Shown piece after piece: positions 1-62,874 of a stretch of 64,000 nt of DNA (within the stretch, counting starts at the first letter, position 1; every line of letters starts with the position of its first letter). Source of the stretch: Pecten maximus. Lineage: Eukaryota. A program made the translations under genes and the position numbers. The stretch is taken from positions 50,654,001-50,718,000 of the forward strand of contig NC_047018.1 of NCBI RefSeq assembly GCF_902652985.1, read 5' to 3'. The notes below the pieces were generated by a model, which did not search any database, was not told where the DNA came from, and saw only the letters and a list, made by a program, of their open reading frames with translations.

Positions 1-29
1 AATTAAAAATATATCAAACAGTAACTCAC

Positions 30-125
30 CTTTACAAGATCCTGTGTCCCAATCACACATCATGTCCTTACAATTTCCTGAACAGTTCTGATCACAGTTA
101 GTACCGTGCTTTCCAGGTATACAGT
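30..125 (-). CDS. Gene A EGF-like exon
   Basis: [31 protein letters not shown]. 96 nt, AG/GT. Confidence 0.87.
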
Positions 126-1653
126 CTGTAAAATATCAGTGTCTATCCATAGTAAATGATACTTTAATACATATTATCGTTTTGTCGTCATATAAATGTC
201 AAAGTATTATCATCTTAATTACCGTTATTGGTTTAATACGACGACAAATAAGGTCCACAATGAGCTTTTAAAAATGAATTTCTGTGCTTTTGATAGTTTG
301 TATTGTTTTTGAAGGTATGCAAAAACTATCCAATATTTTACTTCGAGATGAGAAAAAAAATCTTCTGACAATCATATCGTAGCAATTTTCGGACAACAAA
401 CTAAACAAAACTCTCATTCAGATACAAAAACGAAATGTCTTATTATTTCTGCCTCAGAAACTAGATAATGAATTACTACGGCTACTAGATAACTATGTGA
501 TGTTCTCAACACGTTAACTGCGATAGTGATACAGGTAAACTTAAACGTCTAGTAGAGACCAAGGCGGAATCTTCATCTTACCCTTTAATAATAATTTTTA
601 AAATGTTAAAAATATACTATACACACTATATAGCTATGAATAATCCGTCACAACAGTTGAACTTTATCGGCGAAGACTGGGGGGAAATGAAAATAAATCG
701 AAAACACTGGTGTATTAGACAATATTTATGTTAAAATACTATTTACATTGATATTAATAACTTATCTCGATACATGTATATGATATTTTACTGACTTTCA
801 ATTTTGTTCAATGCATGAGGTTGACTTTGCAAGGTTAACGGTAATAATGGTGAATTCATTTGGTAATATTCTTTATTATATATTATGAATATGCTCGTAG
901 GCCTGAAGCTCACCATAACATTCCCCATTAAATGTCACAGTATTATTATCTTAATTTTGGTAATTGGTTTGAAACGATGACAAGTAGTCAGAACCCGTGC
1001 ATTCTCCGCTCTGCTGCTCACATTTAGCACAGTTGCTATGGCATGTCATCAAACAGTTTGTACCGTAAAATCATCCAGTATAGTCTAGAAAGTAAATGTG
1101 TGACTTCATAATGTGAGATAATGATAAAGATGTTCCACGATTAACAAGCATTTGTAATTTGTAAAAGTGATAAAAGGTTAAGAGCAGAATGTGTAATTCA
1201 TCAGCGTGTGCAAAGTAATCTTCAATGTAGCAAGACATTCATATTTCATTTATTGAAAGGGGAATATTACCTGCATTCAATAGTATATGCAAGGTTAACG
1301 GTAATAATGGTGAATTCATTTGGTAATATTCTATATCTGAATTTTACTTTATTATGTATTATGAATATGCTCGTAGGCCTGAAGCTCACCATAACATTCC
1401 CCATTAATTTTCTCACACTCTCTGTCCTTGCAATTTTTAGAACATCTATGTTCACATCGAATACCGTACCGCTGATGAGCACAATCTGGAAATACACAAA
1501 ATAATATTTATTTACCTCATGTGTGCTACCTTATTATCGATATCATCGTATATATAGCCATTACAATTGTAAGTACAACGCTATCAACTTTAATATTATT
1601 TTTTTGAATGCATGTCATTAATGGCTTTGACTTCTTTAATGACTCAAGTAAGG

Positions 1654-1689
<36 letters not shown>

Positions 1690-4600
1690 AATTAGAGAGA
1701 ATCACGAACCACTTGACCAAATCAATTACACAGTAGATAAAAATAAATCGCCTATACAGTTTCCCGTGGACTTTTCACACAACATATCCTTACAATTTCG
1801 AGGACAGTCCTGATCACATGTGTTTCCGTACTTTCCAGGGATACAATCTGAAATCATAAGAATCCTCCCAAAATAATGCTTATTTTAACGTATACTATTG
1901 TTTGGTTCGCTAACATGTAGTTTTCCCTACTTAACATTGAGTATTAATACTCCGAATCTGTCGCAATTGAAAATATTGAAAAATCCACGCCCACCAAAAA
2001 CGTATGTAGACCACTCTTCATATATATCTGACCCATACCAAAACAAATTCCTGTGTCTTTCGAACAAGCGTTGTCTTTACAATTTGTAGGACAATCCGAG
2101 GTACAGTGGTCGCCATACTTTCCTGTGAAGCAATATGGAAAAAAAGGAATATTCTGTTTAAATTCCCCTCTTTTCTGCAACATTGTCTGGGTTTAAGCAT
2201 GGTTGTGAGTCGATGTCAGTATATGAAATTTAAAAAAAAAACAGGGAAAATTGATTTAGTTTTTCTGCATGTAAAGTCGTATGATTATTGATCGTATTCT
2301 GACATGCATTACAATGGGATGCATATCTCGTATGTTAATTTTTGTGATAGTCACTTTCTGTCCTGTCAATATTCAGATATGAAAAAAACGTAAGAATTTT
2401 CTTGCAAGATACATTTCACTAGTTTATAAGTAAATCTTTCATTAAATGGCAACACTACAGTACTTCATTTATCAGATAATCACATTATAACTCCTTATGT
2501 GACACCAAGTGCAGATGTTCGAAGATCTCTGATACAACTGATGGTTCTTTAGTTAAAGTTTTCTGATTTGGCTTTAGGTATTAATAACCAGAAAACGCAG
2601 CTAGTCAGTAAACATCCGATAACTCTGACAGCGCGCCTGCTAGCGGGCTTGATTTGCCGGCTTCCTGCGCTGGATTAAATATGTATACTGTTCTTTATTA
2701 GATTCTGTTGGTAAAGGTCATTTCGTAATTGATCTTGAAACACACTTTTAAAAGCGATTACACTATCCTCTGTATCTTTAAATTTGTAGATGAAACAATG
2801 ACAAAATATCCAGAAGAAATACAAATCATATACTTATTTGATATCGGATACCACAAAGATCTATCCATGGAATTAGTCTCAATGTCAAGGGGGAAAAGAA
2901 AGACAGATTTTTTTTGTTTATTTCAACCATTTTTGAGAAAAAGAAACCCCATCTGGCTGTATCTAATTAAGTTCAAATACATTTACTTTTGATTAATTGA
3001 GCCATCCGATAATGGTTCAGGGTCGCGTAAACTTCGCGTGCATGGCATTGACAGCTATATTTTGAAATGCTTCACCATTATTTCAATGTGCTACCGACAT
3101 ATGCTTTTTTTGTTAATATTATATTTGTGTATAAATAACGATAACTTACAGAAACAGGCACCAGTTGTGGAGTTACAGTTACCGCCATAACACGATGCTG
3201 GGCAAGGATTGTTACAGTGTCCGTTACCGTATCTCCCTACTTGACATCCTGTTTTGGAAAAAAGATCAAGATGGTAAAACATATTACATTGTATAGTAAG
3301 CAAATATATTTCATTTTCCAGCCAGATCATTATTTGCCATGCCCCGACAAACTTTATTCTATCAGAAACATGATATTATGTTTAATGTTTGAGGTACAGA
3401 TTTTGTTTTTTTGTTTTTGATGATCTTAGTTAAGTTTGTAATTTTACAACATACTGGCAATGGATTGACAAGCGTAAAAGGTTGCCCCATACCATCATAC
3501 TGACCAGTAAGTTTTGTGAAAATCTAAGAATATCTCACAGAAATTAAATAAAATGTAAATGTATAATTACAGGTTTACCTACTGCTGTTTTACCAATTCT
3601 CTGTTTTAGGTATATTTAAAGCATTACTTTTCAGAATCATGCAAAATGACAATTTGGTATGTTTCAGTAACTGTAAACTCAGATTGACATTTTTTGAAAT
3701 TAGAATTGCTATTGCTAAACTTCATCAATTTCGTGCATTTGTTCTGAATATGTACGGCAGAATCGGGTAAGGAAAACCCTGTCTTGATATTAGAATATTT
3801 ACGTTTAAAATGAAGAAAGAATTGTTCTTACATAGAAACACTTCACCAAAATATTTATTCTAGCCCCAATATCAAACAGAATCATACTCACCAAACACCT
3901 GTACCTCACACAACTCCAGAATAGCGTCATCATCATACCAGTTGTATAGTGGAGGGGTGTTTCTATCGTTGTACACGGTCACATACCGACCTACATCCGG
4001 GCACTGATGAGTTATGTTTAACTGTACCGCATTTCTACTACTACTAGTGTCCTCAAAACAAAGGACGCCTTCTGTGGGCGAGGTGGTGGTATTGGATACA
4101 TAAAGCTTGTAGCCGGCCAATCTTTGCTGAAAATTATCTAAACAAAAGAAAACAAAAATCGTCAGGTAGATAATCAATCTATAAGAGAATAATGTGGACA
4201 AATGTCAATATAAATGTCGAACGTTATCAATCCCAAACTTACATGTTACACGAGATTATATTATTGGAAGATCTTAGCGTCATAAAAAATCGCCTTCTGT
4301 GTGAAAAGTGCCGAGCACAATCAGAGATCTTGCGTATGAGGAAATAAAATGGATTAATACAGAAGCAAGTATATCTATGAAGAATGGCAGAAAACACTTA
4401 AGTGCTTAGACTATTGCCGTGATGGCCGAAATGGTTGTTCTGTTAAAAAAGGTACCAAATCAAATTCAAATCAGACTCGTTCATTCAAGATAATTTTCTG
4501 TTTTACTTGTACATGTACATGTACATTTTCTAAATCATGGACCAGTCAGATTGTCTTCTGACAAAATCCTGCATTAAAGTCCTTCTCGATTCCTTAATGT

Positions 4601-7600
4601 CTTTTTGAATCTTTTTACCAAAATGTTTGTCGTAGGTTTCTCATTGTGTATGTCTTGTCAATGTTATGTCAATTTGTTAATTTTAACCTGCTGAGTATAC
4701 AGGTACATATAACGACACATATATCGTCATAACCTCCTTTATCACTTTCTCGCCCTGAGTTTTTAATACAATATAAAGTAGATTGACTTCCTGACAGTCC
4801 AAGAGCGAACAGTATTAAATGTGTTTATTTTTATCAATTCACATGCAGTCTAGTTAAGAGTTATGTTTCCAACGTCGCAACGAATACGTATATGGTATCG
4901 AGGACTTATCATTATGGTATGACACCACAAAACGACGGACAAAGGGAGAGAAATCTAGCATACAATACGGATATTTTGGAAGTATTACTGAATGTTCACC
5001 GACACATCACGACACGGTCTAGGACGTACAATGCATTAACTTATTTATCAAATAAAGTGGTTGATGGAGAATATCATTGATAAAGAATATTGCCAAACTG
5101 GTACCCATAATGGTCTATGATTATGTTCATATTCTGCATTTGATGTAAACGCAAGATAATATGATCAATATAAACCTGGAAGGAAATAAAGTCTTGCGTA
5201 AAATTGTATCAGAGCAAAGAGAAATGTGGGCAAAATGATCATTTTTATATGTTACCTATTTTGAAATATTCCCAACAAGTATGAACAAGTCAAAATAAAA
5301 CAGAATATCCTAAAACAGAAATTCCCTTAGCGAATCAAATTGTTAGATACATTCTTCTTTACATAAATACATTTTGATTCTCCAGGAACTCCACAGATAG
5401 TGACGATATGTTTTCTTTGAATAACACATAAGCCCTAATCAAGAACACCACATAATCTACAACATCAGTTGCTTACGAGATGTCGACTGTTAACGCACAA
5501 TTAAACAACGAATGTCTACCCGAGATGCATGTTGATCGTAACCATTGGAAAGTCTCAAAGTCGAAATTGAAGATATTTTCTTTCAGTGTGCCATATGAAT
5601 CCGGAGGTTATCATTTTTTTGCCTGATTCTCGCCTCCCAAGTTAGCATATACATAATATAATTTGACGTACCCTGTTTGGCCTAGATTTATAAAGTGTCG
5701 TCAACGCTTGCTGCCAGAACAACTGGTACTATCCTCATGGTAATTTTACAATGGTCACAAATATATAATGTTTCTTTATATGTTTGCTTTGTTTTATCGA
5801 TTTTGAGTTACAGTGACAGTTTTACTTGTTGTTTTTCGACTATTGTCTGGAGAGCGAAGAATAATATAATCTATCATGGGCCTGTTCTGTGGACAGGGAT
5901 ATCTCCAACCGAGTGTAAGAGTTTGGCCAGTCAGCACGAGGCTTGCCGAATGCTGGCCAGCCAAACTCTTACACGAGGGTTGAGATATCCTTGTTCGTGG
6001 AACAGATCCATGATTGATTAGTTTTCTCACATACTTCCAACCAAAGTTTTTATGAAAGTTTTTCATCTCGCCGTCTTCAATGCTCCTTGAAATGTGCGTC
6101 AAAATTGATGACGTCAGCATTTACGACTTGGTTACTCGACGTTAAATGATGACGTTACGTTATTGTGAGCAGCGTCATATAGCGCGTGCCGGCTTTCTTT
6201 ACCCACCCCGTGTAAGATCGATTTATCTTTTCCCTAGCAACCGCCGGATAACCCTGTGAAGTATGGGAGAATTCTCCGTTTTTTACCAACGGATAATTTA
6301 TAGGAATACCGCATTGTTCTGTTTTAAATAATGTCCAAATGTTATGTTAAGTCTTAATTATACATAAGCATTTTCTTTTTTTGTTGAGTTAGCATAATAG
6401 AATAATAATTGCTAAAATGAGTGTTGTAATAAGGCTTATCTACATCGAGGTAACTGAATTTTGGAATCAAAACATTTTTGGTATAGACCCTACACTCACC
6501 TCTGTAGTACATTGTGATCCTACTAATGGTCATCCACTCTCCAAGGTCAACACGCCACCAAACCGTTTTGAGACCCTCCTGTGTATGTGTACAACAGTTA
6601 CTGTATATGTTTGTCTTTGTACAGTTATCCACAACTTTACTTGATGTCCAATTTGCGTTCTCATAGTAACTACTTTGTACTGTTGTTTTATTCAAGGCGA
6701 CGTTAACTGCAATAGATGAAGCAGTACTTGATACTTGATCATGTTGTCTTTACAGTTAAATATAACAATGGTTTTCAGATATCTTGTTATCTTATTTATC
6801 CTTGCCATGGAGTTGTGATAAGTTATCTCAGCTTTCTTAAAGACTCTTGGAAGAAATTCTATCGCGCTCCGCCTTTTTCAACCTATCGTATCGATGTTTT
6901 ACTGAGACACAAGAAAGGCTTTTTCATTTGTGCATCAAACACATAATGTATATGGAGGAAAACGATTTTTAAAAAACCTATAAATACAAAAATGCACACT
7001 TTAATATAAAACAAAGCTCTTCGATATTCGAACTCGTTACACTTATTCTAGTGCTCACCGTTGTCACTGTTTAGCCCCCATTACTGATTCGTTAATGAAA
7101 ACAAAATTGGCAGATAATTATTTATAGATTATATTCTAGGGATTGAAAAATAATTCCAATACCTAAAATCAGTTGATGGTTGTAACAAAATGGGTAGATG
7201 ATTACTTAAATGAATGATGGTACATTTAATACCAATCATTAATTATCATGTCAGAGAGAGTGACTACTGAAGATAAAGATAGATTACCTTGAAATACCTA
7301 GGATGATTCGGAGATGGGAGTTGATAAATGCTACTGACAGTTACATATGTCATTTAACAATATAAACACACCTTCATACTAGTAGGCAAAATGGGTGTGA
7401 CCGAATGAGTACTTTTGAAATTTAAGTTTTGAAAAGGGGTTTGATCCACCATAATAAACACCTTTTGATGAGGCTTAAATCAAAACCATGATTATTCCAA
7501 AGACAATGACTGGTTGATTCCTTGGAACTTGTTTAATTATTTTCCTGTTAAAGATTATATTTCATTTGTATTACTAACTACCTAGTCAAATAACTATAAG

Positions 7601-8583
7601 TATAGACTTATGGCTATCATATGTTCATTAGGGATTGCATGTTTTATCCTATTAGTTATGTTTAAAACGCGAGTAATTTGCCCGGAGTTTGCTTTTGTCG
7701 AGAGATTATTGATGAGTGCCCGTTTATATAAGTATGACTCATTATAAAGTCTGTATATAACAAGCAAAACCTCAAAATCAATAATCATACATAAAAAACA
7801 ACCCATTATTTAGGCAATATTGTTCCATTCGAGTCAATCAATCCATTATTATTGAAATTTTATTAGCTAATGAGCGCATTGAATCTAATGGAAGCAGGAA
7901 AGGAAATCTTGCATGGAATGGGCAGCATAAAGAGCGTCCTGTATGCGGATATAGAGATTATGGGTGGAGAGAGGGAGGGTTAAGGAAATGGGGATAGCAG
8001 ATAATAATGTAACACAGCGCGAAATATAAATAAACTTACTAAATACTAGTCACGAGTATTGTTGTGTTATATGATAGGAGAATAAATCATTTACCAAAGA
8101 CGATCTATTAATAGGAATATCCTAATCTAAAAATAGAAAATCTTCCCTAATACATTGGAAATATGAACATTAGTGTTTAGATATGTTTTTTATATTTAGA
8201 GCTGTGTTTTTTGTTATTGTTTTTAAAATGTTATCAAAAATATTCATAAAAAGTAAACAAATGTAATACATTTGTATGTATTTAAATATATTATATGACA
8301 GATATACCTCAAAATATTGTGTTAATACTTATATGATAAATGCACCAGACAAAACATCAACATATTGAATCGCTCAATACTAACTTCTCTAATCAGGAAG
8401 TAATCTAATCTACTTCGCATTTTGTAGTATCAACTATCTACCTGTACGTCATTTTGTATTTACTACATTCAGTTCGTATTTTAAGTACTTACTTTCAGAT
8501 CTGACAGTATTTAATACCATGAGAATGATCAGGATCACATCTCCTCCTAACAAAATCTTTCTCGTCGTCATTCTGAGTTTCAT
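30..8583 (-). CDS. Gene A (5' part, continues beyond left edge): paralogous F-type lectin/EGF-repeat receptor, presumably an RPTP
   Basis: Exons 8493-8583, 6500-6706, 3892-4137, 3150-3248, (2039-2134), (1752-1847), 1390-1485 and 30-125 are collinear with gene B exons and introns. TM and PTP exons are not inside the window. Confidence 0.85.
995..1084 (-). pseudogene. Gene A EGF pseudo-exon (copy of the membrane-proximal exon type)
   Basis: YTG*FYGTNCLMTCHSNCAKCEQQSGECT. In-frame TGA, Cys>Tyr and a weak donor. Homologous to 28228-28317. Confidence 0.75.
1390..1485 (-). CDS. Gene A EGF-like exon
   Basis: CAHQRYGIRCEHRCSKNCKDRECEKINGECY. 96 nt, AG/GT. Confidence 0.85.
1656..1688 (+). repeat. 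Poly-G tract (33 nt)
   Basis: Read directly from the sequence. Confidence 0.95.
1752..1847 (-). CDS. Gene A EGF-like exon with non-canonical GC donor
   Basis: [31 protein letters not shown]. Donor AG|gcgatt. Confidence 0.6.
   Translation of the reverse strand: MVSLESTETHVIRTVLEIVRICCVKSPRETV
2039..2134 (-). other. Gene A EGF-like exon, intact frame but AG>AT acceptor
   Basis: CFTGKYGDHCTSDCPTNCKDNACSKDTGICF. Acceptor ttccAT versus tttcAG in the gene B counterpart at 38195-38290. Confidence 0.72.
3150..3248 (-). CDS. Gene A EGF-like exon
   Basis: [33 protein letters not shown]. 99 nt. Confidence 0.88.
3892..4137 (-). CDS. Gene A F-type lectin C-half exon
   Basis: [24 protein letters not shown]. 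246 nt. Confidence 0.9.
5869..6018. mobile_element. Long imperfect palindrome of a non-autonomous DNA element (possibly Crypton-like)
   Basis: Arms of ~65 bp around a CGAGGCTTGCCGA core. The same core occurs, reverse-complemented, in the palindrome at 25893-26048. Confidence 0.55.
6500..6706 (-). CDS. Gene A F-type lectin N-half exon
   Basis: NVALNKTTVQSS..VVDNC..CCTHT..WWRVDLG..MYYR. 207 nt. Confidence 0.9.
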
Positions 8584-8608
8584 GGCGACTCCTCATTAAC
8601 CAGGAAGT
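8394..8608. promoter_or_regulatory. Pair of ETS-type (A/C)AGGAAGT motifs flanking exon 1, conserved in all four copies
   Basis: Gene A 8394-8401 and 8601-8608; gene B 49084-49091 and 49289-49296; relic 50832-50839 and 51005-51012; gene C 61801-61808 and 61987-61994. Confidence 0.45.
8493..8583 (-). CDS. Gene A exon 1, signal peptide (M)KLRMTTRKILLGGDVILIILMVLNTVRSE
   Basis: In-frame ATGs at 8583 and 8571; the latter aligns with genes B and C. GTAAGT donor. Confidence 0.83.
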
Positions 8609-12272: not shown

Positions 12273-12403
12273 AAAAGAACAACAACAACAAGAACGAAAA
12301 CAAACAAAAGAACAAACAAACAAAAACAAAAAACAACGGAAAATGCAATAATTCAGAATTGTCAACTTTATTAAATTGTAATAAAAAAAACAGCATCATT
12401 TAT

Positions 12404-14256: not shown

Positions 14257-14453
14257 AAGTATATACACATCGGTAGTGGTATCCAGGTACTCATTAATCA
14301 GTTCATGTACACGTCGTTGGTATCCAGGTACCCATTAATTACTTCATGTGCATGTCGGCGTTATCCAGGTACTCATTAATTACTTCATGTTCACGTTGAT
14401 GGTTTCCAGGTACTCATTAATCAGTTCATGTACACGTCGGTGGTATCCAAGTA
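14257..14453 (-). repeat. Same 41-bp repeat (~5 units including the coding copy) at the 3' end of gene B
   Basis: Units at 14380-14420, 14339-14379, 14298-14338 and ~14257-14297 lie downstream of the stop. Confidence 0.92.
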
Positions 14454-14489
14454 GTCTTTGATCATGTTGTAGCAGGATTGGTACTGGTC
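14421..14489 (-). CDS. Gene B last coding exon
   Basis: [22 protein letters not shown]. 69 nt. Confidence 0.9.
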   Translation of the reverse strand, partial: DQYQSCYNMIKDYLDTTDVYMN

Positions 14490-17400
14490 CTGAAAGTTTA
14501 AATTTAATTTCATTTGATCGAAAATAAACAGTGAGTCATTCCGATGATGATGATAATAACACGCCAAAATGTTGGGATAGGTAAATACATTTTCCAGACC
14601 GACATAGCAACAAGGTTGGCAACAACAAAAAAGAAGAAAAAAATGGTTTGTCTTCATCCGATGCAAACGACTGAAATACCTTTTCTATAGTATAATATTT
14701 ATCGCTGAACCTAATTACATCTTATGCTGATCAATGGAAATGGATACATGACATAACATTAACCATGATTTGACTAATATCCGAATTTAAGATTAACATA
14801 ATATTTTTGAGGTAAATAGATTATAACTGTAGATACAGGTTGATAAATTATTTATTAATAGTAGTGAATTGTGCTAAATAAAATGTTCACAAAAAAACAA
14901 CAAACAAAACAAGCAAAAAACAAACAGACGAACAACCAAAACAAAAACAATAATTATAAATTAAAAAAAGCCATACTAAAATTTGGATTATACCTTAATC
15001 AAGAAAACCGCCAGGAAAGCATAAGAACAATAGATGGAAATGTAATGGAAATAACGGAGTCTCTGCTCTGATGATTCTAGATCAGTTACTATGGGATGTA
15101 ATATTCTCCAAGTTAGAATCTTGGTAGTAGAACAATTGCAGCATTTATTATTAGGTTTAAAAAAGGTTGACGTTCGTATTGAACAAGAAACAAATTCCTA
15201 ACGTAATCATGATGGCGACGAACATATTATTGCTATCATCGACTAAAGCTCGTCTTTAAGCAGTGAACATGTCAATATACGTACAAAATTGGTCACAAAT
15301 GCTGGACGTCGCACAAGCAGCTGACGTGAAATCTGAAAGATATCTACTTCTTCGTCGCTCTTCATTTGGTCTCGGGCATTACTGATACAACAGAACAGCC
15401 CACTCTGGGAATAGCCATCACTGAAACATCAAAGCAGCATGATTATATGACGTAGAAAACAAAATAAATGTCTCTCACATCCTTAACAGTCGTTGATAAT
15501 GTTTGCTGACGTCTCACAAAGTATATAATACTAGGTATATTCACTGACGTATAAAGTATAGCATAGATAAGTATGAAGGTAAAACTACATACCGACACAT
15601 GACTATTGTTGTCTTGGTATCGTCCGATTTGCGTCTGCTGTCAACAAGTTCCAGTAGGTGAAGCAACATGGACGAATCCTTGGGGGCTGATGATTCTCTA
15701 CCCCATCCAGTCACGTGGAACACTCGAACAGTGGAATTAAAGCTGTTCACCTGTGAGGAATACATTCCAAATACCTATATTTACATGCAAAATATAATAA
15801 AACTGAAATGTGACACTACCAGGACTTAGAAATAGCACTGCTGACATAGAATATAACAAAACAACGTCTATTAAGATATTTCCAGGAAGTCATTTATATG
15901 AATGTAGGATAGAGATGACCTGGGCACCGAATGTTGTTAAAGACTGAGACTCACCCTTACGAAATATTTAAAGGAACATTTATTTATTTATTTTGTATCA
16001 TATTATAATATTATAATATTTATACATTACCGCGTTTTCGATTGCAATTTCAAGCAAATCAACATTTGCTATCGTTGAAGATTTCCCCCTGTGTTCCAAC
16101 GTAAAATCTCCGATAGATTTATCTTCGTCTTCACTTGGAAGCCAATTCTAGGATAGGTTAAACGTATGATGTTAAAATGTAATGTGATTATATCTTGATA
16201 TATGGATTGTACAGTCCAACGAGTGCTCAACTATTTTATAGTTTATTCGCTTAAACACTAATTTACTGGACAACATGCCTCAATTTTATCGTAAAGAAAA
16301 TTCTTTGAGTGTTACAAGACCATGGCACATGTCGTGTGTTGGACCTCTGTGATGTCACACATAAATGACATCACAGGTCACTGATGCAATACTACCACCG
16401 ACTGAACAGTTTGGAATATAAAAGTTATACCAATATGAACATTCTCAGAGATAGACTTTTTAAAAATCCGTTTTCAGTTTAAAATTTAATGATAAGTTTT
16501 CTTTGATTTTGTGAATCAAACCGGCCACAGACTGGGGCCCATCAGAATATATGGCTTTACGGTAAATTATTGTGTTTGTTAAATCTCAATATCCTGATTT
16601 TGATAGATGAAATTAAAGATGAGAGTATCTACTTTGGGTAATATTTGTGTGGAAATACACGTACAATCTCTTCCGGCTGGATGATGACTATTGTCTGACA
16701 GCTGTGGTCCATTATCATCGTCAACAGATCCACCACGGTGTCCTCCAGAGGAGTCTGTGTGACGATGTACCCAGATTTGGATGTATAGGACTATGTGAAA
16801 TGATAAACACATATCTTTGACATTATACATCAGAATGGCAATTTTGACAAATTTCTTGTAGGCAGAAAAAATGTGAATGAAAGGTTCACCCAATATAGAC
16901 AGAAAGAAATTATAGAAAAAGCCCCAATAAACAGGTGTAATTTCAGCAACGAGATTCAATGGAAGAAAAGAAACCTTATATTGTTTGATATCATAGAACT
17001 TCAGTACGTTTAAATTAGCTGTAATACCATTCATATTAATCGCAATGTTTCCCCTATTGACAAGGAAAAGTAAGCATAATCCACCAAAAATTACGAATGC
17101 ATGTCCTCATCTATATTATTGAATAATATTACAAAAGGTTACAATGACCTACATGCAATTATCAATATAGATTTTATTCAACGATGCTTTGTTATCAATT
17201 CAAATATTCACCTATCAATCATATATAGACATAAATTTAATTTTGCATCATTCTTATTAATTAACTATTAGTTAATCAATTAACACACATATGCTAATCA
17301 ATCGATTAAAACCAGATGACAGATACTTACAGGCACTGACACTGCATTGATATAATCCGGTCTACCAGTAGCCTGTGATCGAAGGTACGCCCTGAACTTG

Positions 17401-50392: not shown

Positions 50393-50819
50393 AATGATAT
50401 ATGTCATTGTGTATTTTATCAGAATGTTAAATCGTTAGAGATATCTTCAAAACTTACGTTTATGGAGTTTTAGGTATGCTAAATATATAGTCATATCCAG
50501 TCAACTCCGTCACCTGAACCTTGTAGATTACCATAATGAGTCTGGAAGTCTTTTGCCCTATGTAACAGTGATGGGACATTAGGTGGCAAGATATCCAAAA
50601 CAATATACTACCGGTACAGTGCTTTACATAAACCATTGAAACGGGTTGGAACCGACAACAAAAGCGTCGTGCGACTTGAGGAAAAGACTATGTCATAACA
50701 CGGTTACGCGGGATAAATAAACTTTGAGTTAAAGAGAAAAACAATAATTCATTAATTAAATAGGATATATGAATTCATTTGTGTAATATTTAATTAATGA
50801 ATATTTGTTTATATTTTCT

Positions 50820-53771: not shown

Positions 53772-55076
53772 GTTTTCAAGTACACGGCGATGGTATCCAG
53801 GTACTCGTTGAGCAGTTGATGTACACGTCAGTGGTATCCAGGTAATGCTTAATCAGTTCATGCACACGCTAATGGTTTCCAGGTACTCATTAATCTGTAC
53901 AACTACATGTCAATGGTATCCAGGTACTCATTAATCAGTTAATGTACACGTCGGCGGTATTCAGGTACTCATTAATCAGTTCATGTACACGTCGGTGGTA
54001 TCCATGTACTCATTAATCAGTTCATGTTCACGTCGGTGGTATCCAGGTGTTCATTAATCAGTTCATGTACACGTCGGTGGTATCCATGTACGCATTAATC
54101 AGTTCATGTACACGTCGGTGGTATCCATGTACTCATTAATCAGTTCATGTACACGTCGGTGGTATCCAGGTACTCATTAATCAGTTCATGTACACGTCGG
54201 TGGTATCCAGGTACTCATTAATCAGTTCATGTACACGTCGGTGGTATCCAGGTACTTATAAATCAGTTCATGTACACGTCATTGGTATCCAGGTACTCGT
54301 TAATCAGTTGATGTACACGTCGGTGGTATCCAGGTACTCATAAATCAGTTCATGTACACGTCATTGGTATCCAGGTACTCGTTAATCAGTTCATGTATAC
54401 GTCGGCGATATCTAGGTACTCATTGATCAGTTCACGTACACGTTAGTGGTATACAGGTACTCATTAATCAGTTCATGTATACGTCGGTTGTATCAGGGTA
54501 CTCAATGATTAGTTCATCTACATGTCAGTGGTATCCAGGTATTCATTAATCAGTTCATGTATACGTCGGCGGTATTCATGTACTCATTAATCAGTTCATG
54601 TACACGTCGGTGGTATCCAGGTACTCATTAATCAGTTCATGTACACGTCGGTGGTATCCAGGTACTCATTAATCAGTTCATGTACACGTCGGTGGTATCC
54701 AGGTACTCATAAATCAATTCATGTACACGTCATTGGTATCCAGGTACTCGTTAATCAGTTCATGTATACGTCGGCGATATCTAGGTACTCATTGATCAGT
54801 TCACGTACACGTTAGTGGTATCCAGGTACTCATTGATCAGTTCATGTACACGTTAGCGGTATCCAGGTACTCATAAATCAGTTCATGTACACGTCAGTGG
54901 TATCCAGGTACTCATGAATCAGTTCATGTACACGTCAGTGGTATCCATGTTTTTATTAATCAGTTCATTTACATGTCGATGGTATCCAGGTACTCATTAA
55001 ACAGTTCATGTACACGTCGACGGTATCCAGGTACTCATTAATCAGTTCATGTACACGTCGGTGGTATCCAGGTAGT
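53772..55076 (-). repeat. 41-bp minisatellite (~31-32 units) derived from the terminal codons and stop of gene C
   Basis: Unit (minus strand) TTAATGAGTACCTGGATACCACCGACGTGTACATGAACTGA. Period 41, e.g. 54011 to 54052. Confidence 0.95.
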
Positions 55077-58000
55077 CTATGATGACGTTGTAGCAGTATT
55101 GGTACTGGTCCTGCATTTGAAATAATTTCATACTTATCGAAAATGCATAAGATACACACATTATGATCATTATAATTGCATAACAAATTAATGGGAAAGG
55201 GAAATTACTCTTCCATACCAGCTAAGCTAAGACTGGAAATTACAAAATAAGAAAAGATTCCGCGTCATCCAGTCAAGAACAAACGCGGATAATATGCCTC
55301 AATTGAGTAAACCACAAAGAAAGCAGAGGGCAAATGCAATAGAAACATTGATAAATGGAGAATGGAGTATCCCGGTAAGATAAGACTTTTATAATCAGTT
55401 TGATAGAAATATTAAACAGTAAGTCAATTCCCAATGCAATCAGGACCGCCATGAAAGTATCGATATTATCAACTGAAGTCAAAACAGTGTTCTTGGAGTA
55501 GTTGAAATGTCAATATACGTACAAAATTTATCACAAATGCTGGACGTCGCACAAGCAGCTGACGTGAAATCTGAAAGATATCTACTTCTTCGTCACTCTT
55601 CATTTGGTCTCGGGCATTACTGATACAACAGAACAGCCCGCTCTGGGAATAGCCATCACTGAAACATCAAAAGAGCATGAATGATATTATCATAATAAGC
55701 ACAGACTCAAAAGCTTAATGTCTTTCCTCCATATCCTCAACAACCGTCAATATCAAGAAGAATTTGATAACGTCTAACAAAAGTATATTATAGATAAATA
55801 TGAAGGTAAACTACATACCGACACATGACTATTGTTGTCTTGGTATCGTCCGATTTGCGTCTGCTGTCAATAAGTTCCAGTAGGTAAAGCAACATGGACG
55901 AATCCTTGGGGACTGATGATTCTCTACCCCATCCAGTCATATGGAACACTTTAATAGTGGTATTGAAGCTATTTTCCTGAAAGGAATCAATTCCATTTAG
56001 GAAAGACATATTATTTGCATGCAATGGGTAATGGCCATAACCAAAGATTGCAGACTGCGATTATAAGTATGATGGATAGGGATTTTCCACTTAAGGGGGG
56101 TGGGGGGCACAAAATGTTGTTAAAAAACGAAACTGTCTTTTCTGCAGGCTATGCCTTTTCAGACTCCTTCATATCAGAGAAATAAACATGTTCATTTATC
56201 AGTATTCAAGATAGCATATATTTAGCCAGAATTTTTGAAATCAGGATTCAACAAGACACATCAAAACTTAAGACACTACAAAACATCCATCTTACCGTGT
56301 TTTCTATTGCGATTTCTAGCAAAGCGACATTTGCTATTGTTGAAGACTTTCCTTTGTGTTCCAACGTAAAATTCCCGATGGATTTATCTTCACCTTCCCC
56401 TGGAAGCCAGTCCTACGATAGGTAGAATGCAATATCTTCTGATATGGTCATATACCAATATGTGTCAGGCAATACTAGACTTCTTGATAACTATTTTACA
56501 GAGTTCATTTCCTTAAACAGATGCCAGACAATATTTGCTTTTGTTTCATCACAACGAAAATGTTTTGGAGTATGACAGGCCCATCTCAAAAAACCATGTG
56601 TTGCTCCACTGTGACGTCACGAACAAATAATGTCACAGACTGTAACGTCAATGTAATCAAGAAAAGTCTTTCAAAAATAACATGTCGTAATGAAAGCTAA
56701 TTTTGATGGTATTCAATAATTTGTTATGTCTATGCATTCATGTGACAAGTTTACGTCAGTATAATGAATTAACCCCATATTAATTTGATGTTACATAGGT
56801 ACTTTGTAAGATTTTATACCTTTCCGGTTGTAATTTTGTAACGTTTTAAATGAAATGGTTGTTAAGTCAATTACGTAATGTTAATGAAAACCACTGTCAC
56901 CAACCTGCAGTTTGAAATGATTCTATGATACCAATATGAACAGATGAAATTACAGTTTTTTAAATAAAGTGCACCTCGAGCTTCTTCGTTGCGTTACAAT
57001 TGTATGGAAATACACTTACAATGTCGTCCGGATCGATGATGACAATTGTTTGACAGTTGTGCTCCATTATCATCGTCAAAAAATCCACCACGGTGTCCTC
57101 CAGAGGAGTCTGTGTGACGATGTACCCAGTTTTGGATGTATAGGACTAGGTCAAAGGAAAACGGAATAATTGCTTGCATGTGAATGAAAGGTTGATTACA
57201 TGTGGGAAGCAATGTAAGAGTGATCACTAGGTATGTGTACTGGTTTCATGTGGTAATACTGTCACAGACATTTAGTGAAGTAATCATAGAGGTAGACCCA
57301 ACATAAAATCCTTCAGGACTTCAGTATGAAAAATGTTAACGTTAAGATTGACTCTTTCACAACATCTCTAAATAATCTCATAGCACACTTTTTTTTATTC
57401 GTATCAGCATGGAGATATACCACTAGTTCCCTTATCGTTGCGTAATGCATATCCTCCGTTATATCATTGAATGGTGGGGAAAGGTGACCAAGTACAAGAT
57501 TTGATCTAAAATATCACCCGTAATCACTTTTTAACGAGCAAGTTCTTTGATTCTGATTAACTTACAGACATACATAACACACACATACTAATTAATCCAT
57601 TTCAACAAGGTGAAACAAATGCCACATAATACGCATATTACTTACTGGCACTGACACGGCATTTATGTAGTCCGTTCTACAGTCAGTATATGATCGAAGG
57701 TACGCCCTGAACTTGTCAACTGAACAGAACCAGAGGAAAACATCAATCACAATATTTCCTTTCCTTTAACAATTTCTGATAATTCATATGAAGTTAAGAA
57801 GTCGAATTTTAATCATACATGGTAGTCTATGACTGGTTGTGTAATGTAGAGGTTTTATGTTTTAAAAACATGCAATTCATCACTACAATTGTTTAATTAT
57901 TGTACATTTCCATTGCAATTATACTCTGTTTCACAAAACTCGTTTTAAATTTGCTTCAGATTTAGGGTAAAACACGAAAAAATTTAACTACCGTAAAATA

Positions 58001-58227
58001 CTTTAATTTCAATGGTGATTGTTCAAGGAAGACGTCATTTGACGAGAGAATTTTGTGAGTTTGAATACGTTTGCCAAACATTGCTTCATGTTAATAGAGT
58101 TTTGATTGGAAAGAGGTTATTTTTTACCTGCAACGACAGATAAGGTTCTGTTCTTCAACTTGTTTGATGGCAGTAAGGCGGCTCTGTAGTTTGTCTCATT
58201 GTAAGCTGGTTTCATAGTTTGTGTCAG
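55042..58227 (-). CDS. Gene C intact PTP D2 exons (58128-58227, 57646-57719, 57020-57145, 56296-56412, 55819-55976, 55523-55658, 55042-55110)
   Basis: All seven exons match gene B in length, have canonical splice sites and contain no stops. An ATG at 58215 would give 255 aa. Expression is unknown. Confidence 0.55.
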
Positions 58228-61160
58228 CTAAATGAAACGTTTGTTGCAAAATCATTGAGTGATATCTTTGTAGATATCTTTTTATGTAAACTGCAAGTAA
58301 AATACACGTATTGATATAGAGACCCTTTTCTTATGATGTAGAAAAATAACATAATTTTACGTTCTAGAAGTCTATATTTCAGCAACAGGTTTATTATCAG
58401 AATTCTATTACAGAAAATGCCAATTGTATTAATAGTAAATTTTCTCTTGCAATTGTATTGATATCAAACGGGAATACTCTATATAGAATTAGAGAGTACC
58501 TGGTATTCCTTTCTTAGCTTTGTTTGGTTCGTGGGGCCGCCATTTCAGAGAGCAGTAAGTGTCGCGTGGTACTTCATTCTTGGAATCAGGGTGTCTGGCA
58601 TATCGAAGGCTTCTATAAGGAGCTAGTGTACAGCTATGTATTGTTCCTATATAAATGAATGAATCAGTATTACTGGCATTTAAAGTTTCATAATTTCTAC
58701 ACGAACTTCAATGTTATAGGTTTCATCAAAAGATAATCATAGGGCCAGGTGTATCGTGTGTGTTGAAATTGCACAACATATTTCTTTATTATGTTATTTT
58801 TTATGATTCTATCTTTGTCACATGTACATGCAATGACAAATGTTTAAATAACTTATTTTCTTGCAATTTTTCGTAAGTATGCATTAGGTGTTCATCAGAA
58901 TCTATTATAAAATCTGCATGAATACTGGAGTGCATTTTCTACACCTGGGATGTAAAGATGAGAATAATAATTTCGTTTAGTAACATCGTTGTTTTTTTTT
59001 ATTATACGACATTTCAACAGATGTAAGATCTTACCAGAAAAGGCATCAAAGACATTATTTATATATATGTTGACGATCTTTTAATCGAAAAACAGGTGGG
59101 TTGATCATGTCGATTCATATGTTACCAAAATACACGAGTTTAAAGTTTTTCAACTCTTCAAAAACAACCAATTACCTCGATCTTTAATTAAAGCAATGCC
59201 AACCGGGACTATTGAAAAAATAAGCTATATGAATTTTTAATATCTAGCAAGTAACATTCTTGCACTCGTTCTGGTGTAGCTATTTGTTATCAATGGTCTA
59301 GTTGTCATTATCACGATTTTCGTGAACAATGTCGAGTACTGACGGAACAAAATACACAAGGTTCGAGAGACATAATCTCATGATATACAAATGTAGTCAA
59401 CATACTTATTTCTATTGAAGATTATTTTATATCCAGTTGATACCTCCTGAGCAAATAGATGAACTCTACATAGATATACGAATGGCTAGAAATATAAAAG
59501 AAAATATTTTGAAATGAGACATTTGCTTAAAGTATTCAAAATATTATCAAATTTTATTTAAACAATATAGAGTTCATCACTGTGAAACTTACAACAGTTT
59601 GAACCATATTGATCCTATCCTTTCGCATGGTTTTTATGTACTGCATTACGTCAATGTGTCCGGACTCCTTCCCATATTCCAGGAGAGCGTCTAGGGCAAT
59701 ACATGTTCCTGTTATCGCATGCCAGCACTGCCAAAGGGTTCAGGCATTAATTAATGAATTGAACAACGTCAGAACTAACATAAAACAGATGATGCGATAT
59801 CGTCAAAACTCAATAACATAATAACAATACAATAGCAAAGCGAATGAATAAATAAAAAAAAATAGGAAAACGTCGCAAGCCCCTTTAAAACGACGAGCAT
59901 GAAGATATACTGAATCCTGGAAGAGTTCATTTGGGTCTGGAGTCCCGTGGTCGGGCCATGTGGTATAGTGGAACTGATGTATCTGACGTACTGACTTCGT
60001 CTGAATGAGTAAATTTGATATTCAGAATTATTGATATCATTTATAGTCATACATATATGAACACATTTAGTTTGGCTTTTCTAACTATTGCTATTCCTGT
60101 TTTATTTATACCTTCTTTTCTGTAACTGTAAGGTCCCGGATGATGTAGAAGGCATACGACCTTTCCCTGTCCATACCTGTGGTCAGTACCGGGATAAAGA
60201 GTTTGGACACCTTAACTACACGGCCACCGCGGCCGGTCTGACATGGAAGGGCCAAAATTTTAAAACACACCAAATCATAACGTCGTCGGTTTTAAAAATA
60301 CCTAATATTCCGGTCGCTTCATTTTTTGGCTTGGTAATTGGGCAATTATATGTAAATTGGATTTATTTCCGTGACCACAACAGATAATGTTTATCGTCCT
60401 GTTTGCATAAAATGTGTCGTTTTATCACTCTTCAGTAAAGGTATGGTTCCTAAAATTCGTGTTGGTAAAGTTCGTACAAGTAAAATTTCGTTTGAAATGT
60501 AACCTCTATACATTAATAAGATAGTAATCCATTTCGAGTCAAAATGGCAGTGTATTGTTTAGGTATTTTCAATGATATCAGACGGTTTTCCTCCCCCCCC
60601 CCCTCTCAAATGTCAATTGTGAAAATATAATTTTTCCTAGTGATAACAATTATTTATATTTCCTTATTCAGTTACCTTTATAGAATAAAGTATTGTTTAA
60701 AATAATTAGCTCCTTAACTTCAATAATGCCGCTGTTCTAATCGAGATAACTTAATTCCATGATCGAAATATGTCTGATTGAGACATTTCACTCACTTCTG
60801 TAGTATATTTTGATCTCACTAATGGCCATCAGCTCTCCCAGATCAACACGCCACCAGACCGTTGTTTTACCAGGCGCCGTATGTGTACAACAACCTCTAT
60901 TCAAGATTGTATCTATCAGTTATCCACAACTTTTCTTGCTACATAATTATCTCCCCCAAACTCACTACTTTGTTCTGTTTGTTTATTCACGGCGACGTTA
61001 CCTGCAATAAATGAAGAATAAGTTGATACCTGATAAATTAACGATGGTTCTGACATAACTGGTCACATTATCTTTCCTTACATTAAGATATGATAAATAA
61101 TTTTACCTTAACCGCTATTGCAATATTATATTTTTTTATTACGCCAATCTATATGCCACA

Positions 61161-61182
61161 CCCCCCCCCCCCCCCCCCCCCC
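61161..61182 (+). repeat. Poly-C tract (22 nt)
   Basis: Read directly from the sequence. Confidence 0.95.
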
Positions 61183-62874
61183 GCCGACTGTATTTGTAAC
61201 TCAGTGCACATATGATTGAACTTTGCTCATCAGCGAGTTCAATTTGTCATATTCTATGCATAGACAGAGCGTTTAACTATTTATAACAACATAAATATAA
61301 TCTAATAGATAAAAAAAACTAATATCATGAAATAAATTGATACCAACATGTATGTATAACCATGTAACTTCTTACTTAGATCCAAAGTACAAGGACAAAA
61401 ATGCAATCAATATCAACAATTGGTTAAAGATATCTTTGTTTTTGTACGTTTCTAATTGGAATGTAATTAATGATCATTTCATAGATGGCAATAAACTTTT
61501 TTCTTCAAATAAGTATTATATACATTTATAGAAGTATATGCCTGCGGTATTTCACAACAATATTAGTGGTTGTATGACTGAGATTTAATATTATAATGAA
61601 CCTGAAAATAGTCCCAAGAAATTATTCATGCAATGTTAATCTCCCTTCTGTAGGAGCTCAAAAGTAGTAGCAAAAAAGATATTGTTAGTTTTTGAAATAA
61701 TTACACGATGAAAGAGCCGACTATCCTGAAAGTGATTACTGTTGGCTATTACGAAACAAAACATCAACGTATTGAAACACTCATTACTGACCTCTCCAAT
61801 CAGGAAGTAATATAACCTACCACGTATTTAGTAGTATTATCTACATACATGTACATCATTGTGTATGTACTAGTTTCATTTCAGATATGACAGTATTAAA
61901 TATGTAGAAAAAGATCAGGATCAAACATCTTTCTACAATACTCTTTCTCGTCGCCATTCTCAGTTTAATGACGACTCCACATCAACAAGGAAGTTAAATG
62001 TATGTTATTTAATGATCCTGTGTTCGATTTTCAATAGAAGTTGGCACAAGGTGTATTTTTCCAAACAAAATTACATACTGGTTCCGGGACACTGCCTTCA
62101 ACTCAACAGCTATGTTAACCTTATACTACGCTGTTTTGTGTGCACCTTTCTGTTAAATATCCAATGCGTATGTACTAGGTTTAAATGCCTTCAATACGTC
62201 GATCCACAGGTACACATATGTAATTAGTATTCTAACGAAGTGCTGGCAGTATTAGGAGTGCATAAATTTAACGCTATTCAACATTTACAGTATCATATCA
62301 AGTTTTACTGAAAAGCAATGTCACGAACAGTCAGGGTCAATTTGAGTAGAGGTCTCTTTGTGCTAACTGGTGACTTCCTGACAGAACAACATCCGGGAGG
62401 CCCGTCGCGTGCCATCAAGAGCAATTAGGGTAATGTGTCTTGCCAAAGGCGATTGGACTCACATATGCATACTTGTTGTCATTTTAGCGACTGGCTCGGT
62501 TATGTTTTTTTCTTCATGTCCTGCATTCAGTATGTGACACAGGCACCCACCGTTCGCTATTTACCTTCTGAATAGCTTGTACAATACATTGCAGCCAGTT
62601 ATTCGACACACTGCAACATTATACCTACACACAAGGTGATGGAGTTCTTTCCGTATAGAGTTTACCTCTGAACGCAAACATTTTCAATTTCTCTGCAGGC
62701 AAGATGGGTAAATTAACACATTAAAGATATTGTATTTCTATCTTTGAACATACAAAAAACCTGAGCACAAGTTATCCAACATATGATAAGATAATTCCAT
62801 AGAAAATAACATAACAACATACATTTTGCAAGATGGCATATTTACATAATTTTAGAGAGAAAGAGAGACAATGA

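What the first reader, a model, noticed from the sequence alone, without database searches (positions are those of the whole stretch)
30..61957. Tandem cluster of F-type-lectin / EGF-stalk / dual-domain tyrosine phosphatase receptors: a candidate diversified glycan-sensing inhibitory receptor system
Seen: three head-to-tail paralogs plus an orphan promoter, with the full architecture reconstructable for gene B. Established: F-type lectins bind fucosylated glycans and act in invertebrate immunity and gamete recognition, while classical RPTP ectodomains use Ig/FN3/MAM/CA domains rather than F-type lectin plus MEGF-type EGF repeats. Inference: a glycan sensor wired directly to an active phosphatase and undergoing birth-and-death duplication could be a self/non-self 'off' receptor. 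It would be functionally analogous to Siglec+SHP or CD45, but in one polypeptide. Automated pipelines would probably label such genes 'PTPRK/PTPRA-like' or 'MEGF10-like', hiding the lectin. I cannot tell from the sequence whether this architecture has already been described.
Basis: partly seen in the sequence, partly recalled or inferred. Interest (0 to 1): 0.85.

Follow-up and report, generated by a model that had tools for sequence, protein, structure and literature searches.

The report
Lectin-headed tyrosine phosphatase receptor cluster
This stretch of the scallop Pecten maximus genome holds tandem copies of a cell-surface receptor that joins a fucose-lectin-type sugar-binding head to a tyrosine phosphatase. 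The genes are real and already auto-annotated under generic names, but I found no paper describing them, and they sit among sister genes that carry an activating-type (ITAM-like) tail instead.

Summary
All genes lie on the minus strand.

- **Gene B (14421-49259)** is intact. It reads signal peptide, F-type lectin domain on two exons, a stalk of phase-1 EGF-like exons, a transmembrane segment, an active phosphatase domain D1 and an inactive D2. It is RefSeq XP_033739270.1 ("RPTP alpha-like", 943 aa). That model already fuses lectin to phosphatase but skips nine spliceable stalk exons; including them all gives at most 1230 aa.
- **Gene A** starts in the window and is completed 18.6 kb to its left.
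- **Gene C and the "orphan promoter"** are one internally deleted pseudogene.

The lectin call holds. The best matches among solved structures, by sequence and by fold, are all F-type lectins, and the His/Arg/Arg triad is kept.

The family is large.

New here: at least 21 terminal exons encode a YTSI-x10-YEMV (ITAM-like) tail on the same lectin/EGF ectodomain. They lie in the same supercluster, two of them within 55 kb of the window.

This scan noted the same idea earlier on other DNA of this genome (s1-793007, s1-793518).

The parts
14421..49259 (-). Gene B, the intact lectin-EGF receptor tyrosine phosphatase (RefSeq XP_033739270.1, P0322). It has 23 annotated coding exons plus up to 9 optional stalk exons.
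   Evidence: Exact residue-to-genome mapping; Pfam domains
49181..49259 (-). Gene B exon 1: start codon and signal peptide. It ends in phase 1 at a GTAAGT donor.
46832..47032 (-). Gene B F-type lectin exon 1. It carries the CCTHT histidine, the WWRVDL motif and the first arginine (YYR).
   Evidence: Pfam PF22633, 31.3 bits. Sequence matches to solved F-type lectins: 3CQO 5.4e-13, 2J1R, 4GWI, 1K12
43672..43919 (-). Gene B F-type lectin exon 2 (second arginine in QQRLAGY; C-terminal half of the jelly roll).
   Evidence: Alone it has no match to a solved structure by sequence. The whole domain folds as an F-type lectin in a paralogue
30481..39988 (-). Stalk region holding nine spliceable 93-99 nt phase 1-1 EGF-like exons: 39988-39890, 38290-38195, 36916-36821, 34890-34795, 34357-34262, 33067-32975, 31535-31440, 31070-30978, 30576-30481. 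It also holds one dead exon (32611-32519, acceptor AG changed to AT) and a degenerate copy near 35200. The RefSeq model skips all of them.
27909..28317 (-). Two membrane-proximal EGF-like exons (28317-28228, 28037-27909) that the RefSeq model uses.
26855..26973 (-). Gene B transmembrane exon.
   Evidence: weak TM_ErbB1 match
23699..26449 (-). Juxtamembrane exons (26449-26309, 23887-23699) carrying the YxN motifs DYSNP, VYVNT and VYYNTGP, and a degenerate FTDI-x10-Y segment.
18544..23210 (-). D1 phosphatase domain exons, with [18 protein letters not shown] and the Q-loop all intact.
   Evidence: Pfam; alignment to LAR/PTPRF D1, 259.6 bits
14421..17916 (-). D1-D2 linker and D2 pseudophosphatase exons. 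The active-site loop reads VMCRDGYSQSG (Arg replaced by Gln) and WPD reads WGR. The C-terminus is DVYMN followed by the stop.
1..8571 (-). Gene A, 5' part: signal-peptide exon from 8571, lectin exons about 6704-6495 and 4174-3890, EGF exons. The gene continues left of the window to coordinate -18607 with intact D1 and D2.
55042..61957 (-). Lesions:
- the exon-1 donor is lost;
- a 5-bp insertion puts TGA/TAG into lectin exon 1;
- everything from lectin exon 2 to the N-terminal half of D1 is deleted;
- the 3' half of the WPD exon is replaced;
- the P-loop exon has a 1-bp deletion;
- the exon at 58646-58497 (end of D1 and the start of the linker to D2) has two stops.
The D2 exons 57723-55042 remain open.
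53775..55074 (.). 41-bp tandem array (31.7 copies) derived from the 3' end of the last coding exon of pseudogene C. A 4.6-copy version lies at 14276-14464 at the end of gene B.

Best explanation
The window holds part of a large, bivalve-wide, tandemly expanding family of type I transmembrane receptor tyrosine phosphatases. In each, the ectodomain is one N-terminal F-type lectin domain carried on a variable stalk of MEGF/laminin-type EGF-like repeats.

Shown here:
- the gene structure;
- the F-type sequence and fold class of the lectin;
- retention of the His/Arg/Arg sugar-binding triad;
- a catalytically complete D1 and a degenerate D2;
- conserved YxN tyrosine motifs in the juxtamembrane region and at the C-terminus;
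- birth-and-death turnover;
- interspersion with sister genes that carry the same kind of ectodomain but end in a YTSI-x10-YEMV (ITAM-like) tail.

Inferred: the lectin binds a fucosylated or related glycan on another cell, a microbe or the matrix. Ligand-driven clustering or relocation then changes which phosphotyrosine substrates D1 reaches. The phosphatase-tailed and ITAM-like-tailed members act as opposing arms of one recognition system.
For: - **Gene model.** XP_033739270.1 maps exactly to the window. There is one signal peptide and one transmembrane segment, and all stalk exons are phase 1-1 with AG/GT sites.
- **Lectin.** Pfam scores are above cut-off. The best sequence matches among solved structures are all F-type lectins. 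An AlphaFold model of a close paralogue (P0074; 69% identical to gene B over lectin exon 1) has pLDDT above 90 in this domain, and its top 11 Foldseek hits are F-type lectins, led by 1K12 at E 4.9e-13. The triad is kept: His in 37 of 46, Arg in 44 of 46 and Arg in 42 of 46 aligned family members, including genes A and B.
- **Phosphatase.** D1 motifs are intact and the best tandem-domain matches are LAR, PTPsigma, PTPalpha, PTPepsilon and CD45. D2 lacks the catalytic Arg and the general-acid Asp.
- **Selection.** dN/dS between genes A and B is 0.33 for the lectin domain, 0.45 for EGF, 0.12 for D1 and 0.26 for D2. All parts are constrained, the ectodomain least.
- **Same architecture elsewhere.** Scallops, oysters, mussels, Solemya and Tegillarca. 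Three ESM Atlas clusters of 123, 58 and 59 mollusc proteins have Y_phosphatase in 100% and F5_F8_type_C_2 in 52-63% of members. A 909-aa open frame running lectin to EGF to TM to D1 sits on a 3,844-bp Logan contig, too short to be an intron-containing gene, so probably a transcript.
- **ITAM-like sisters.** Gene models in three scallop genera. The P. maximus genome has 21 tail exons, all in the C4 47.96-50.95 Mb supercluster or on scaffolds C394, C392 and C142. Two such genes lie beside the window: a complete one 34-54 kb past its right end, and one whose last EGF, TM and tail exons were mapped 10-13 kb past it. Lectin domains of the two tail types interleave on a tree, with 5 changes for 6 ITAM-like rows.
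Against: - Which stalk exons are used, and whether the gene is expressed at all, is unknown.
- **Split models.** RefSeq splits several neighbouring genes into ectodomain-only and phosphatase-only models.
- **Lectin departures.** The spacing between the two arginines is one residue shorter than in the eel lectin and the vicinal Cys-Cys is absent, so fucose binding is not assured. Lectin exon 2 alone matches no solved lectin by sequence. The fold test used a paralogue, not gene B itself.
- **Weak EGF call.** Pfam barely recognises the EGF-like repeats: 13.8-15.2 bits, below cut-off, on the one gene B exon that matched at all (two other stalk exons matched nothing), and 22.8 bits in a homologue.
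- **Motif-level ITAM call.** 'ITAM-like' rests only on a motif, and its second tyrosine is YEMV/YEMM rather than YxxL/I.
- **No sign of positive selection.** Domain-level dN/dS stays below 1.
- **Direction of signalling unknown.**
Confidence: 0.6

Rival explanations
1. The receptors work in cell adhesion, gamete or larval-settlement recognition or neural development, as many receptor phosphatases and the oyster sperm F-lectin bindin do. On this reading the expansion reflects reproductive or developmental diversification, not immune or self/non-self sensing.
For: - F-type lectins include oyster bindin (review PMC12221842).
- The closest phosphatase matches are the LAR/PTPsigma adhesion-type receptors.
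- There are no expression data either way.
Against: - Dozens of clustered copies with pseudogenes.
- Interspersed ITAM-like-tailed sisters, which resembles immune-type receptor clusters more than developmental receptor phosphatases.
- Domain-level dN/dS shows no bindin-like positive selection.
Confidence: 0.2
2. The F-type domain has lost sugar binding and serves as a protein-binding or purely structural head, so the receptors are not glycan sensors.
For: - Arg-to-Arg spacing is RxDx3R instead of RxDx4R, and the Cys-Cys that stacks on fucose in the eel lectin is missing.
- Some oyster relatives replace the histidine with Ile.
- Drosophila furrowed is a precedent for a degenerate lectin domain (PMC5712786).
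Against: His/Arg/Arg are kept in genes A and B and in most scallop members. The domain is under purifying selection, dN/dS 0.33.
Confidence: 0.15
3. The fused gene is an annotation construct: a lectin/EGF gene and a phosphatase gene are transcribed separately.
For: RefSeq has ectodomain-only (574-596 aa) and phosphatase-only (761-857 aa) models in the same cluster. No read evidence was obtainable.
Against: - There is only one signal peptide and one transmembrane exon per unit.
- Exon phases are compatible throughout.
- Ectodomain-only models P0203 and P0206 lack any transmembrane segment and end in non-homologous read-through, so they look like truncated predictions.
- Full-length fused models exist in more than 10 bivalve species.
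- A contiguous fused open frame sits on a 3.8-kb contig.
Confidence: 0.05

Closest known systems
Vertebrate tandem-domain receptor tyrosine phosphatases (LAR/PTPRF, PTPRS, PTPRA, PTPRE, CD45)
   Same: Type I membrane topology, an active D1 plus a degenerate D2, and all D1 catalytic motifs. Best tandem-domain matches score 327-421 bits. The C-terminal tyrosine sits in a YxN context, as in the Grb2-binding tail of PTPalpha (from my own knowledge). PTPsigma and CD45 are also regulated through glycans.
   Different: Their ectodomains use Ig, FN3, MAM or carbonic-anhydrase-like domains, or are short and glycosylated. None carries its own lectin domain or a MEGF-type EGF stalk. They are single-copy conserved genes, not tandem arrays of dozens.
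F-type lectins (eel agglutinin AAA 1K12, striped bass FBP32 3CQO, S. pneumoniae SpX, lectinolysin; Drosophila furrowed as a membrane-bound example)
   Same: Sequence and predicted fold of the N-terminal domain, and the His/Arg/Arg triad.
   Different: Known members are secreted lectins, toxin or enzyme modules, or mosaics with CTLD, CCP or pentraxin domains. Neither review lists a phosphatase partner. Arg-Arg spacing is one residue shorter and there is no vicinal disulfide.
Draper / CED-1 / MEGF10 / SCARF1 engulfment receptors
   Same: A stalk of CxxGxxGxxC-type EGF repeats. RefSeq names several family members after these receptors. Draper signals through an ITAM (from my own knowledge), like the ITAM-like-tailed sisters found here.
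   Different: There is no EMI/Nimrod N-terminus; an F-type lectin takes its place. The window's genes carry phosphatase domains rather than NPxY/ITAM tails.
Paired activating/inhibitory immune receptor clusters (KIR, LILR, Ly49, Siglec, SIRP)
   Same: Tandem clusters in which closely related ectodomains are joined to opposite signalling tails, with pseudogenes and copy turnover. Lectin ectodomains occur in Ly49 and Siglec.
   Different: The presumed inhibitory arm is a covalently attached phosphatase instead of an ITIM that recruits SHP-1/2. The ectodomain families are unrelated. Opposition of the two arms is not shown here.
Discoidin domain receptors DDR1/2
   Same: A jelly-roll domain of the galactose-binding-like superfamily (F5/8 type C) heads a single-pass receptor that acts directly on phosphotyrosine.
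   Different: DDRs carry a kinase, bind collagen, and are not expanded.

Membership tests
Classical receptor-type protein tyrosine phosphatase (tandem D1-D2) | PTP domain with the catalytic HC(X5)R loop, WPD loop, KNRY-type pTyr loop and Q-loop in D1 | tested here: met
   [22 protein letters not shown] and MVQTAEQY are present in P0322. Pfam Y_phosphatase 397.6 bits; LAR D1 alignment 259.6 bits
Classical receptor-type protein tyrosine phosphatase (tandem D1-D2) | Signal peptide, single transmembrane segment, second membrane-distal PTP domain | tested here: met
   An N-terminal hydrophobic leader, one hydrophobic segment followed by RRRR, and a second Y_phosphatase stretch that lacks the catalytic Arg and the WPD Asp. 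No dedicated signal-peptide predictor was run.
Classical receptor-type protein tyrosine phosphatase (tandem D1-D2) | Phosphotyrosine phosphatase activity | not testable with these tools
   Needs an enzyme assay
F-type lectin domain (FTLD) | F-type jelly-roll fold | tested here: met
   Model of paralogue P0074 (69% identical to gene B over lectin exon 1): pLDDT above 90 in the domain, Foldseek ranks 1-11 all F-type lectins, TM-score to target 0.77-0.84. Gene B's own domain was tested by sequence only.
F-type lectin domain (FTLD) | Sugar-binding motif: His, then Arg-x-Asp-x4-Arg/Lys | tested here: inconclusive
   His, Arg and Arg are present in genes A and B, but the spacing is RNDFQQR (x3, not x4) and the Cys-Cys pair is absent
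F-type lectin domain (FTLD) | Calcium site and fucose binding | not tested
   Calcium ligands were not examined. Binding needs a glycan array.
MEGF/laminin-type EGF repeats | Six-cysteine EGF unit recognised by a curated profile | tested here: inconclusive
   The cysteine pattern is regular in 11 exons. Pfam scores on gene B exons are below cut-off where there is any match (EGF_laminin 13.8, EGF_STAB1-2 15.2 bits). Homologue P0213 reaches EGF_laminin 22.8 bits against a cut-off of 21.
Paired activating/inhibitory receptor cluster | Related ectodomains joined to different signalling tails within one gene cluster | tested here: met
   The plus-strand neighbour at window coordinates 98.2-117.9 kb has a lectin domain 62-66% identical to gene B's, EGF exons, a TM exon and a YTSI-x10-YEMV tail exon followed by a stop. 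A second such gene ends at 74.5 kb. The supercluster holds 21 tail exons. Tail types interleave on the lectin tree.
Paired activating/inhibitory receptor cluster | Opposite signalling outputs (ITAM recruits a Syk-type kinase; the partner inhibits) | not testable with these tools
   Motif-level inference only

The most novel reading that the evidence does not exclude
Bivalves run an invertebrate paired-receptor system. One rapidly duplicating F-type-lectin/EGF ectodomain is coupled either to an ITAM-like tail (activating arm) or directly to a tyrosine phosphatase (inhibitory arm, with no ITIM or SHP intermediary). The two kinds are interspersed in a roughly 3-Mb supercluster on P. maximus chromosome contig C4. 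They would act as a glycan-based self/non-self or microbe discrimination system that arose by convergence with KIR, Ly49 and Siglec clusters.
Probability: 0.3. Interest if true: 0.85.

Novelty: new variant of a known kind. Interest (0 to 1): 0.65.

Why it matters
Receptor tyrosine phosphatases mostly lack known ligands, and none of the classical ones carries its own lectin. A family in which a recognisable sugar-binding head is wired directly to an active phosphatase offers a tractable model for ligand control of these enzymes.

The expansion into dozens of clustered copies, with pseudogenes and with sister genes bearing an ITAM-like tail, suggests a lineage-specific recognition system in animals that lack adaptive immunity and are farmed at scale.

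The proteins are already in public databases. Their names (RPTP alpha-like, MEGF10, draper-like and so on) hide the architecture, and the F-type lectin literature I could search does not mention it.

Tried and rejected
- **Joined spliced model.** Exons were searched one at a time by reference, and the database protein P0322 stood in for the spliced product. Joining was done only inside local scripts, to check frame and length.
- **Simple motif scan for HCxxxxxR.** It missed the active site, because the motif is split by an intron.
- **Lectin exon 2 alone against solved structures.** It gave only chance-level hits.
- **The single 1.84-billion-protein search.** Ranking by total score was dominated by multi-lectin proteins. 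The useful hits were the single-stretch, high-identity ones.
- **First brute-force exon threading.** It failed because a 39-nt exon (22164-22126) was missing from my list. k-mer mapping solved it.
- **Word-indexed search restricted to the lectin region.** It returned only 19 hits, so it says little about taxonomic range.
- **P0329 as a P. maximus lectin-plus-ITAM-like protein.** Rejected: it is a chimeric model that reads past the tail exon's stop into a multi-copy element and the next gene.
- **'Orphan promoter' as a separate entity.** Rejected: it is the 5' remnant of pseudogene C.

Full report
**Where and what.** The window is contig C4:50654001-50718000 of a 918-Mb, 3983-contig genome. Source names on the matching proteins identify it as the scallop Pecten maximus. 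GC content is 31-39% and the window has no N. All relevant genes are on the minus strand.

**Gene B.**
- RefSeq protein XP_033739270.1 (P0322, 943 aa, "receptor-type tyrosine-protein phosphatase alpha-like") was reached through the 90% cluster of a close paralogue.
- It maps residue for residue onto 23 coding exons from the ATG at 49259 to the last codon at 14424, with the stop at 14423-14421.
- Pfam on it gives F5_F8_type_C_2 at 41.0 bits (cut-off 27.8), F5_F8_type_C at 33.9 bits, and two Y_phosphatase stretches totalling 397.6 bits.
- So a public model already joins the lectin to the phosphatase in this very gene.
- That model jumps from lectin exon 2 (ends 43672) straight to the EGF exon at 28317.
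- Between them lie nine more 93-99-nt EGF-like exons. All have AG/GT sites, all are phase 1-1, and together they keep the frame open, giving at most 1230 aa.
- A tenth copy (32611-32519) has its acceptor AG changed to AT. A copy near 35200 is degenerate.
Which exons are used cannot be settled without reads.

**Lectin domain.**
- *Sequence:* exon 1 alone scores above the Pfam cut-off. Its only significant matches among solved structures are F-type lectins: FBP32 3CQO at 5.4e-13, S. pneumoniae fucolectin-related protein 2J1R, lectinolysin 4GWI/3LE0 and eel agglutinin 1K12.
- Exon 2 alone matches nothing by sequence.
- *Fold:* because a joined model could not be submitted, I folded the 291-aa paralogue P0074 (69% identical to gene B over lectin exon 1) with a 46-row alignment.
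- The lectin domain has pLDDT above 90, and Foldseek ranks 1-11 are all F-type lectins, led by 1K12 at E 4.9e-13 with a TM-score to target of 0.77.
- *Binding residues:* the His/Arg/Arg triad is present in genes A and B and in most family members.
- The Arg-to-Arg spacing is one residue shorter than in the eel lectin and the Cys-Cys pair is missing. Sugar specificity is therefore open.

**Cytoplasmic part.**
- D1 has [18 protein letters not shown] and the Q-loop. The best tandem-domain matches are LAR, PTPsigma, PTPalpha, PTPepsilon and CD45.
- D2 reads VMCRDGYSQSG and WGR, so it is a pseudophosphatase.
- YxN tyrosine motifs in the juxtamembrane region (VYVNT, VYYNTGP) recur from scallops to oysters and mussels.
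- In the scallop proteins whose ends I read (gene A, gene B, pseudogene C) the protein ends in DVYMN.

**The other copies.**
- *Gene A:* it begins at 8571 and runs off the left edge. Flanking DNA shows all D1 and D2 exons intact down to window coordinate -18607.
It has lost the exon-1 donor and has a 5-bp insertion creating TGA/TAG in lectin exon 1.
- Everything from lectin exon 2 to the first half of D1 is deleted.
- The 3' half of the WPD exon is replaced, the P-loop exon has a 1-bp deletion, and the exon at 58646-58497 (end of D1 and the start of the linker to D2) has two stops. The D2 exons remain open.
- *Selection:* rough Nei-Gojobori dN/dS between A and B is 0.33 (lectin), 0.45 (EGF), 0.12 (D1) and 0.26 (D2). 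All parts are constrained, the ectodomain least.
- The lectin remnant of C against B gives 1.0, as expected for a dead exon.

**Size of the family.**
- The lectin exon has at least 67 matches in the genome. Nearly all lie on C4 (47.99-50.92, 23.1-23.9, 34.8 and 41.1-41.2 Mb) or on scaffold C394.
- Phosphatase exon hits pair with them at 15-35 kb on the same strand.
- The array changes orientation between 50.72 and 50.75 Mb.
- Fused lectin-phosphatase models occur in Pecten, Argopecten, Mizuhopecten, Ylistrum, Crassostrea/Magallana, Ostrea, Saccostrea, Mytilus, Solemya and Tegillarca.
- Three ESM Atlas clusters of 58-123 mollusc proteins have the same domain pair.
- A 909-aa open frame running lectin, EGF, TM and D1 sits on a 3,844-bp Logan contig. 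That is too short for an intron-containing gene, so I take it to be a transcript. This is an inference; the contig could not be fetched.

**ITAM-like sisters.**
- An earlier first-stage note on other DNA of this genome (s1-793007) suggested lectin-EGF ectodomains with an ITAM-like tail. I tested the idea around my window.
- Short-tailed scallop homologues (P0080, P0253, P0331, P0333, P0330, P0332, P0047, P0025) have lectin, EGF and TM, and a tail of the form YxxL/I-x10-YExx.
- In P. maximus the terminal exon at C4:49104384-49104467 encodes EQSVPDTGYTSITHRQEETPHVYEMVFT followed by a stop.
- The RefSeq model P0329 reads past that stop into a multi-copy element, so it is chimeric.
- This exon has 21 matches, all in the C4 47.96-50.95 Mb supercluster or on scaffolds C394, C392 and C142.
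- Two are next to the window. One is a minus-strand gene whose last EGF, TM and tail exons lie at window coordinates 76.7-74.5 kb.
- The other is a complete plus-strand gene at 98.2-117.9 kb, whose lectin domain is 62-66% identical to gene B's. That is as close as gene A's is.
- On a lectin-domain tree the two tail types interleave (5 changes for 6 ITAM-like rows; quick search, SH-aLRT support only).
- The tail labels rest on automated gene models and a motif.

**Literature.**
- Seven full-text searches found no paper that links an F-type lectin domain to a receptor phosphatase.
- The 2017 and 2025 F-type lectin reviews contain the word "phosphatase" zero times and list CTLD, pentraxin, CCP, transmembrane and FA58C partners only.
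- Bishnoi et al. 2015, the domain census those reviews cite, was not readable here and may list the combination.

**Limits.**
- The joined spliced model was not sent to any search tool.
- Glycan binding, phosphatase activity, the signalling direction and any immune role are inferences.

**Verdict.** The architecture is public but hidden under automatic names and, as far as I could search, undescribed. The functional reading is plausible but untested. The interspersed ITAM-like sisters are the most interesting new point.

Noticed in passing
L007:548-634 (-) and L011:3795-3881 (+), i.e. window coordinates about 74.5 kb and 117.8 kb, outside the window: Terminal exons encode EQSVPDTGYTSI-x10-VYEMVVT followed by a stop. 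They belong to lectin/EGF/TM genes that neighbour the window. The genome holds 21 such exons, all in the same supercluster or on scaffolds C394, C392 and C142.
   Followed up: yes
window 53775-55074 and 14276-14464: A 41-bp tandem array (31.7 copies) derived from the end of the last coding exon of pseudogene C. A 4.6-copy version lies at the end of gene B.
   Followed up: partly
window 32519-32613: An otherwise intact EGF-like stalk exon whose acceptor AG is changed to AT (tttcat|aatgcg), so it is probably skipped. A further degenerate copy lies near 35200.
   Followed up: yes
window 26309-26449: Gene B's juxtamembrane exon reads [18 protein letters not shown]. It has the same [Y/F]TxI-x10-Y spacing as the ITAM-like tails of the sister genes, which hints that the two tail types share an ancestor.
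   Followed up: partly
G000:C394 (586.9-kb unplaced scaffold): It carries about 11 lectin exons, many phosphatase exons and 7 ITAM-like tail exons. Several have bit scores identical or nearly identical to copies on C4 (for example C394:581054 against C4:50785242). It is likely an uncollapsed haplotype or a recent duplicate of this cluster.
   Followed up: no
G000:C4:49099300-49104470 (L005): RefSeq model P0329 (LOC117326606, 1346 aa) is chimeric. It reads past the stop of an ITAM-like tail exon into a multi-copy, transposon-like ORF with more than 30 genomic copies, and then into the next gene's lectin exons.
   Followed up: partly
window 10250-11000: A 42-bp minisatellite between genes A and B creates a spurious 200-aa ORF rich in HDTRY-like repeats.
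   Followed up: no
window 62876-63252: A 27/54-bp tandem repeat upstream of pseudogene C.
   Followed up: no
P0074 (291 aa, database protein): This gene model joins a lectin domain and two EGF repeats directly to a fragment of D2. It is an internally deleted copy much like pseudogene C, which suggests such deletions recur in the family.
   Followed up: no
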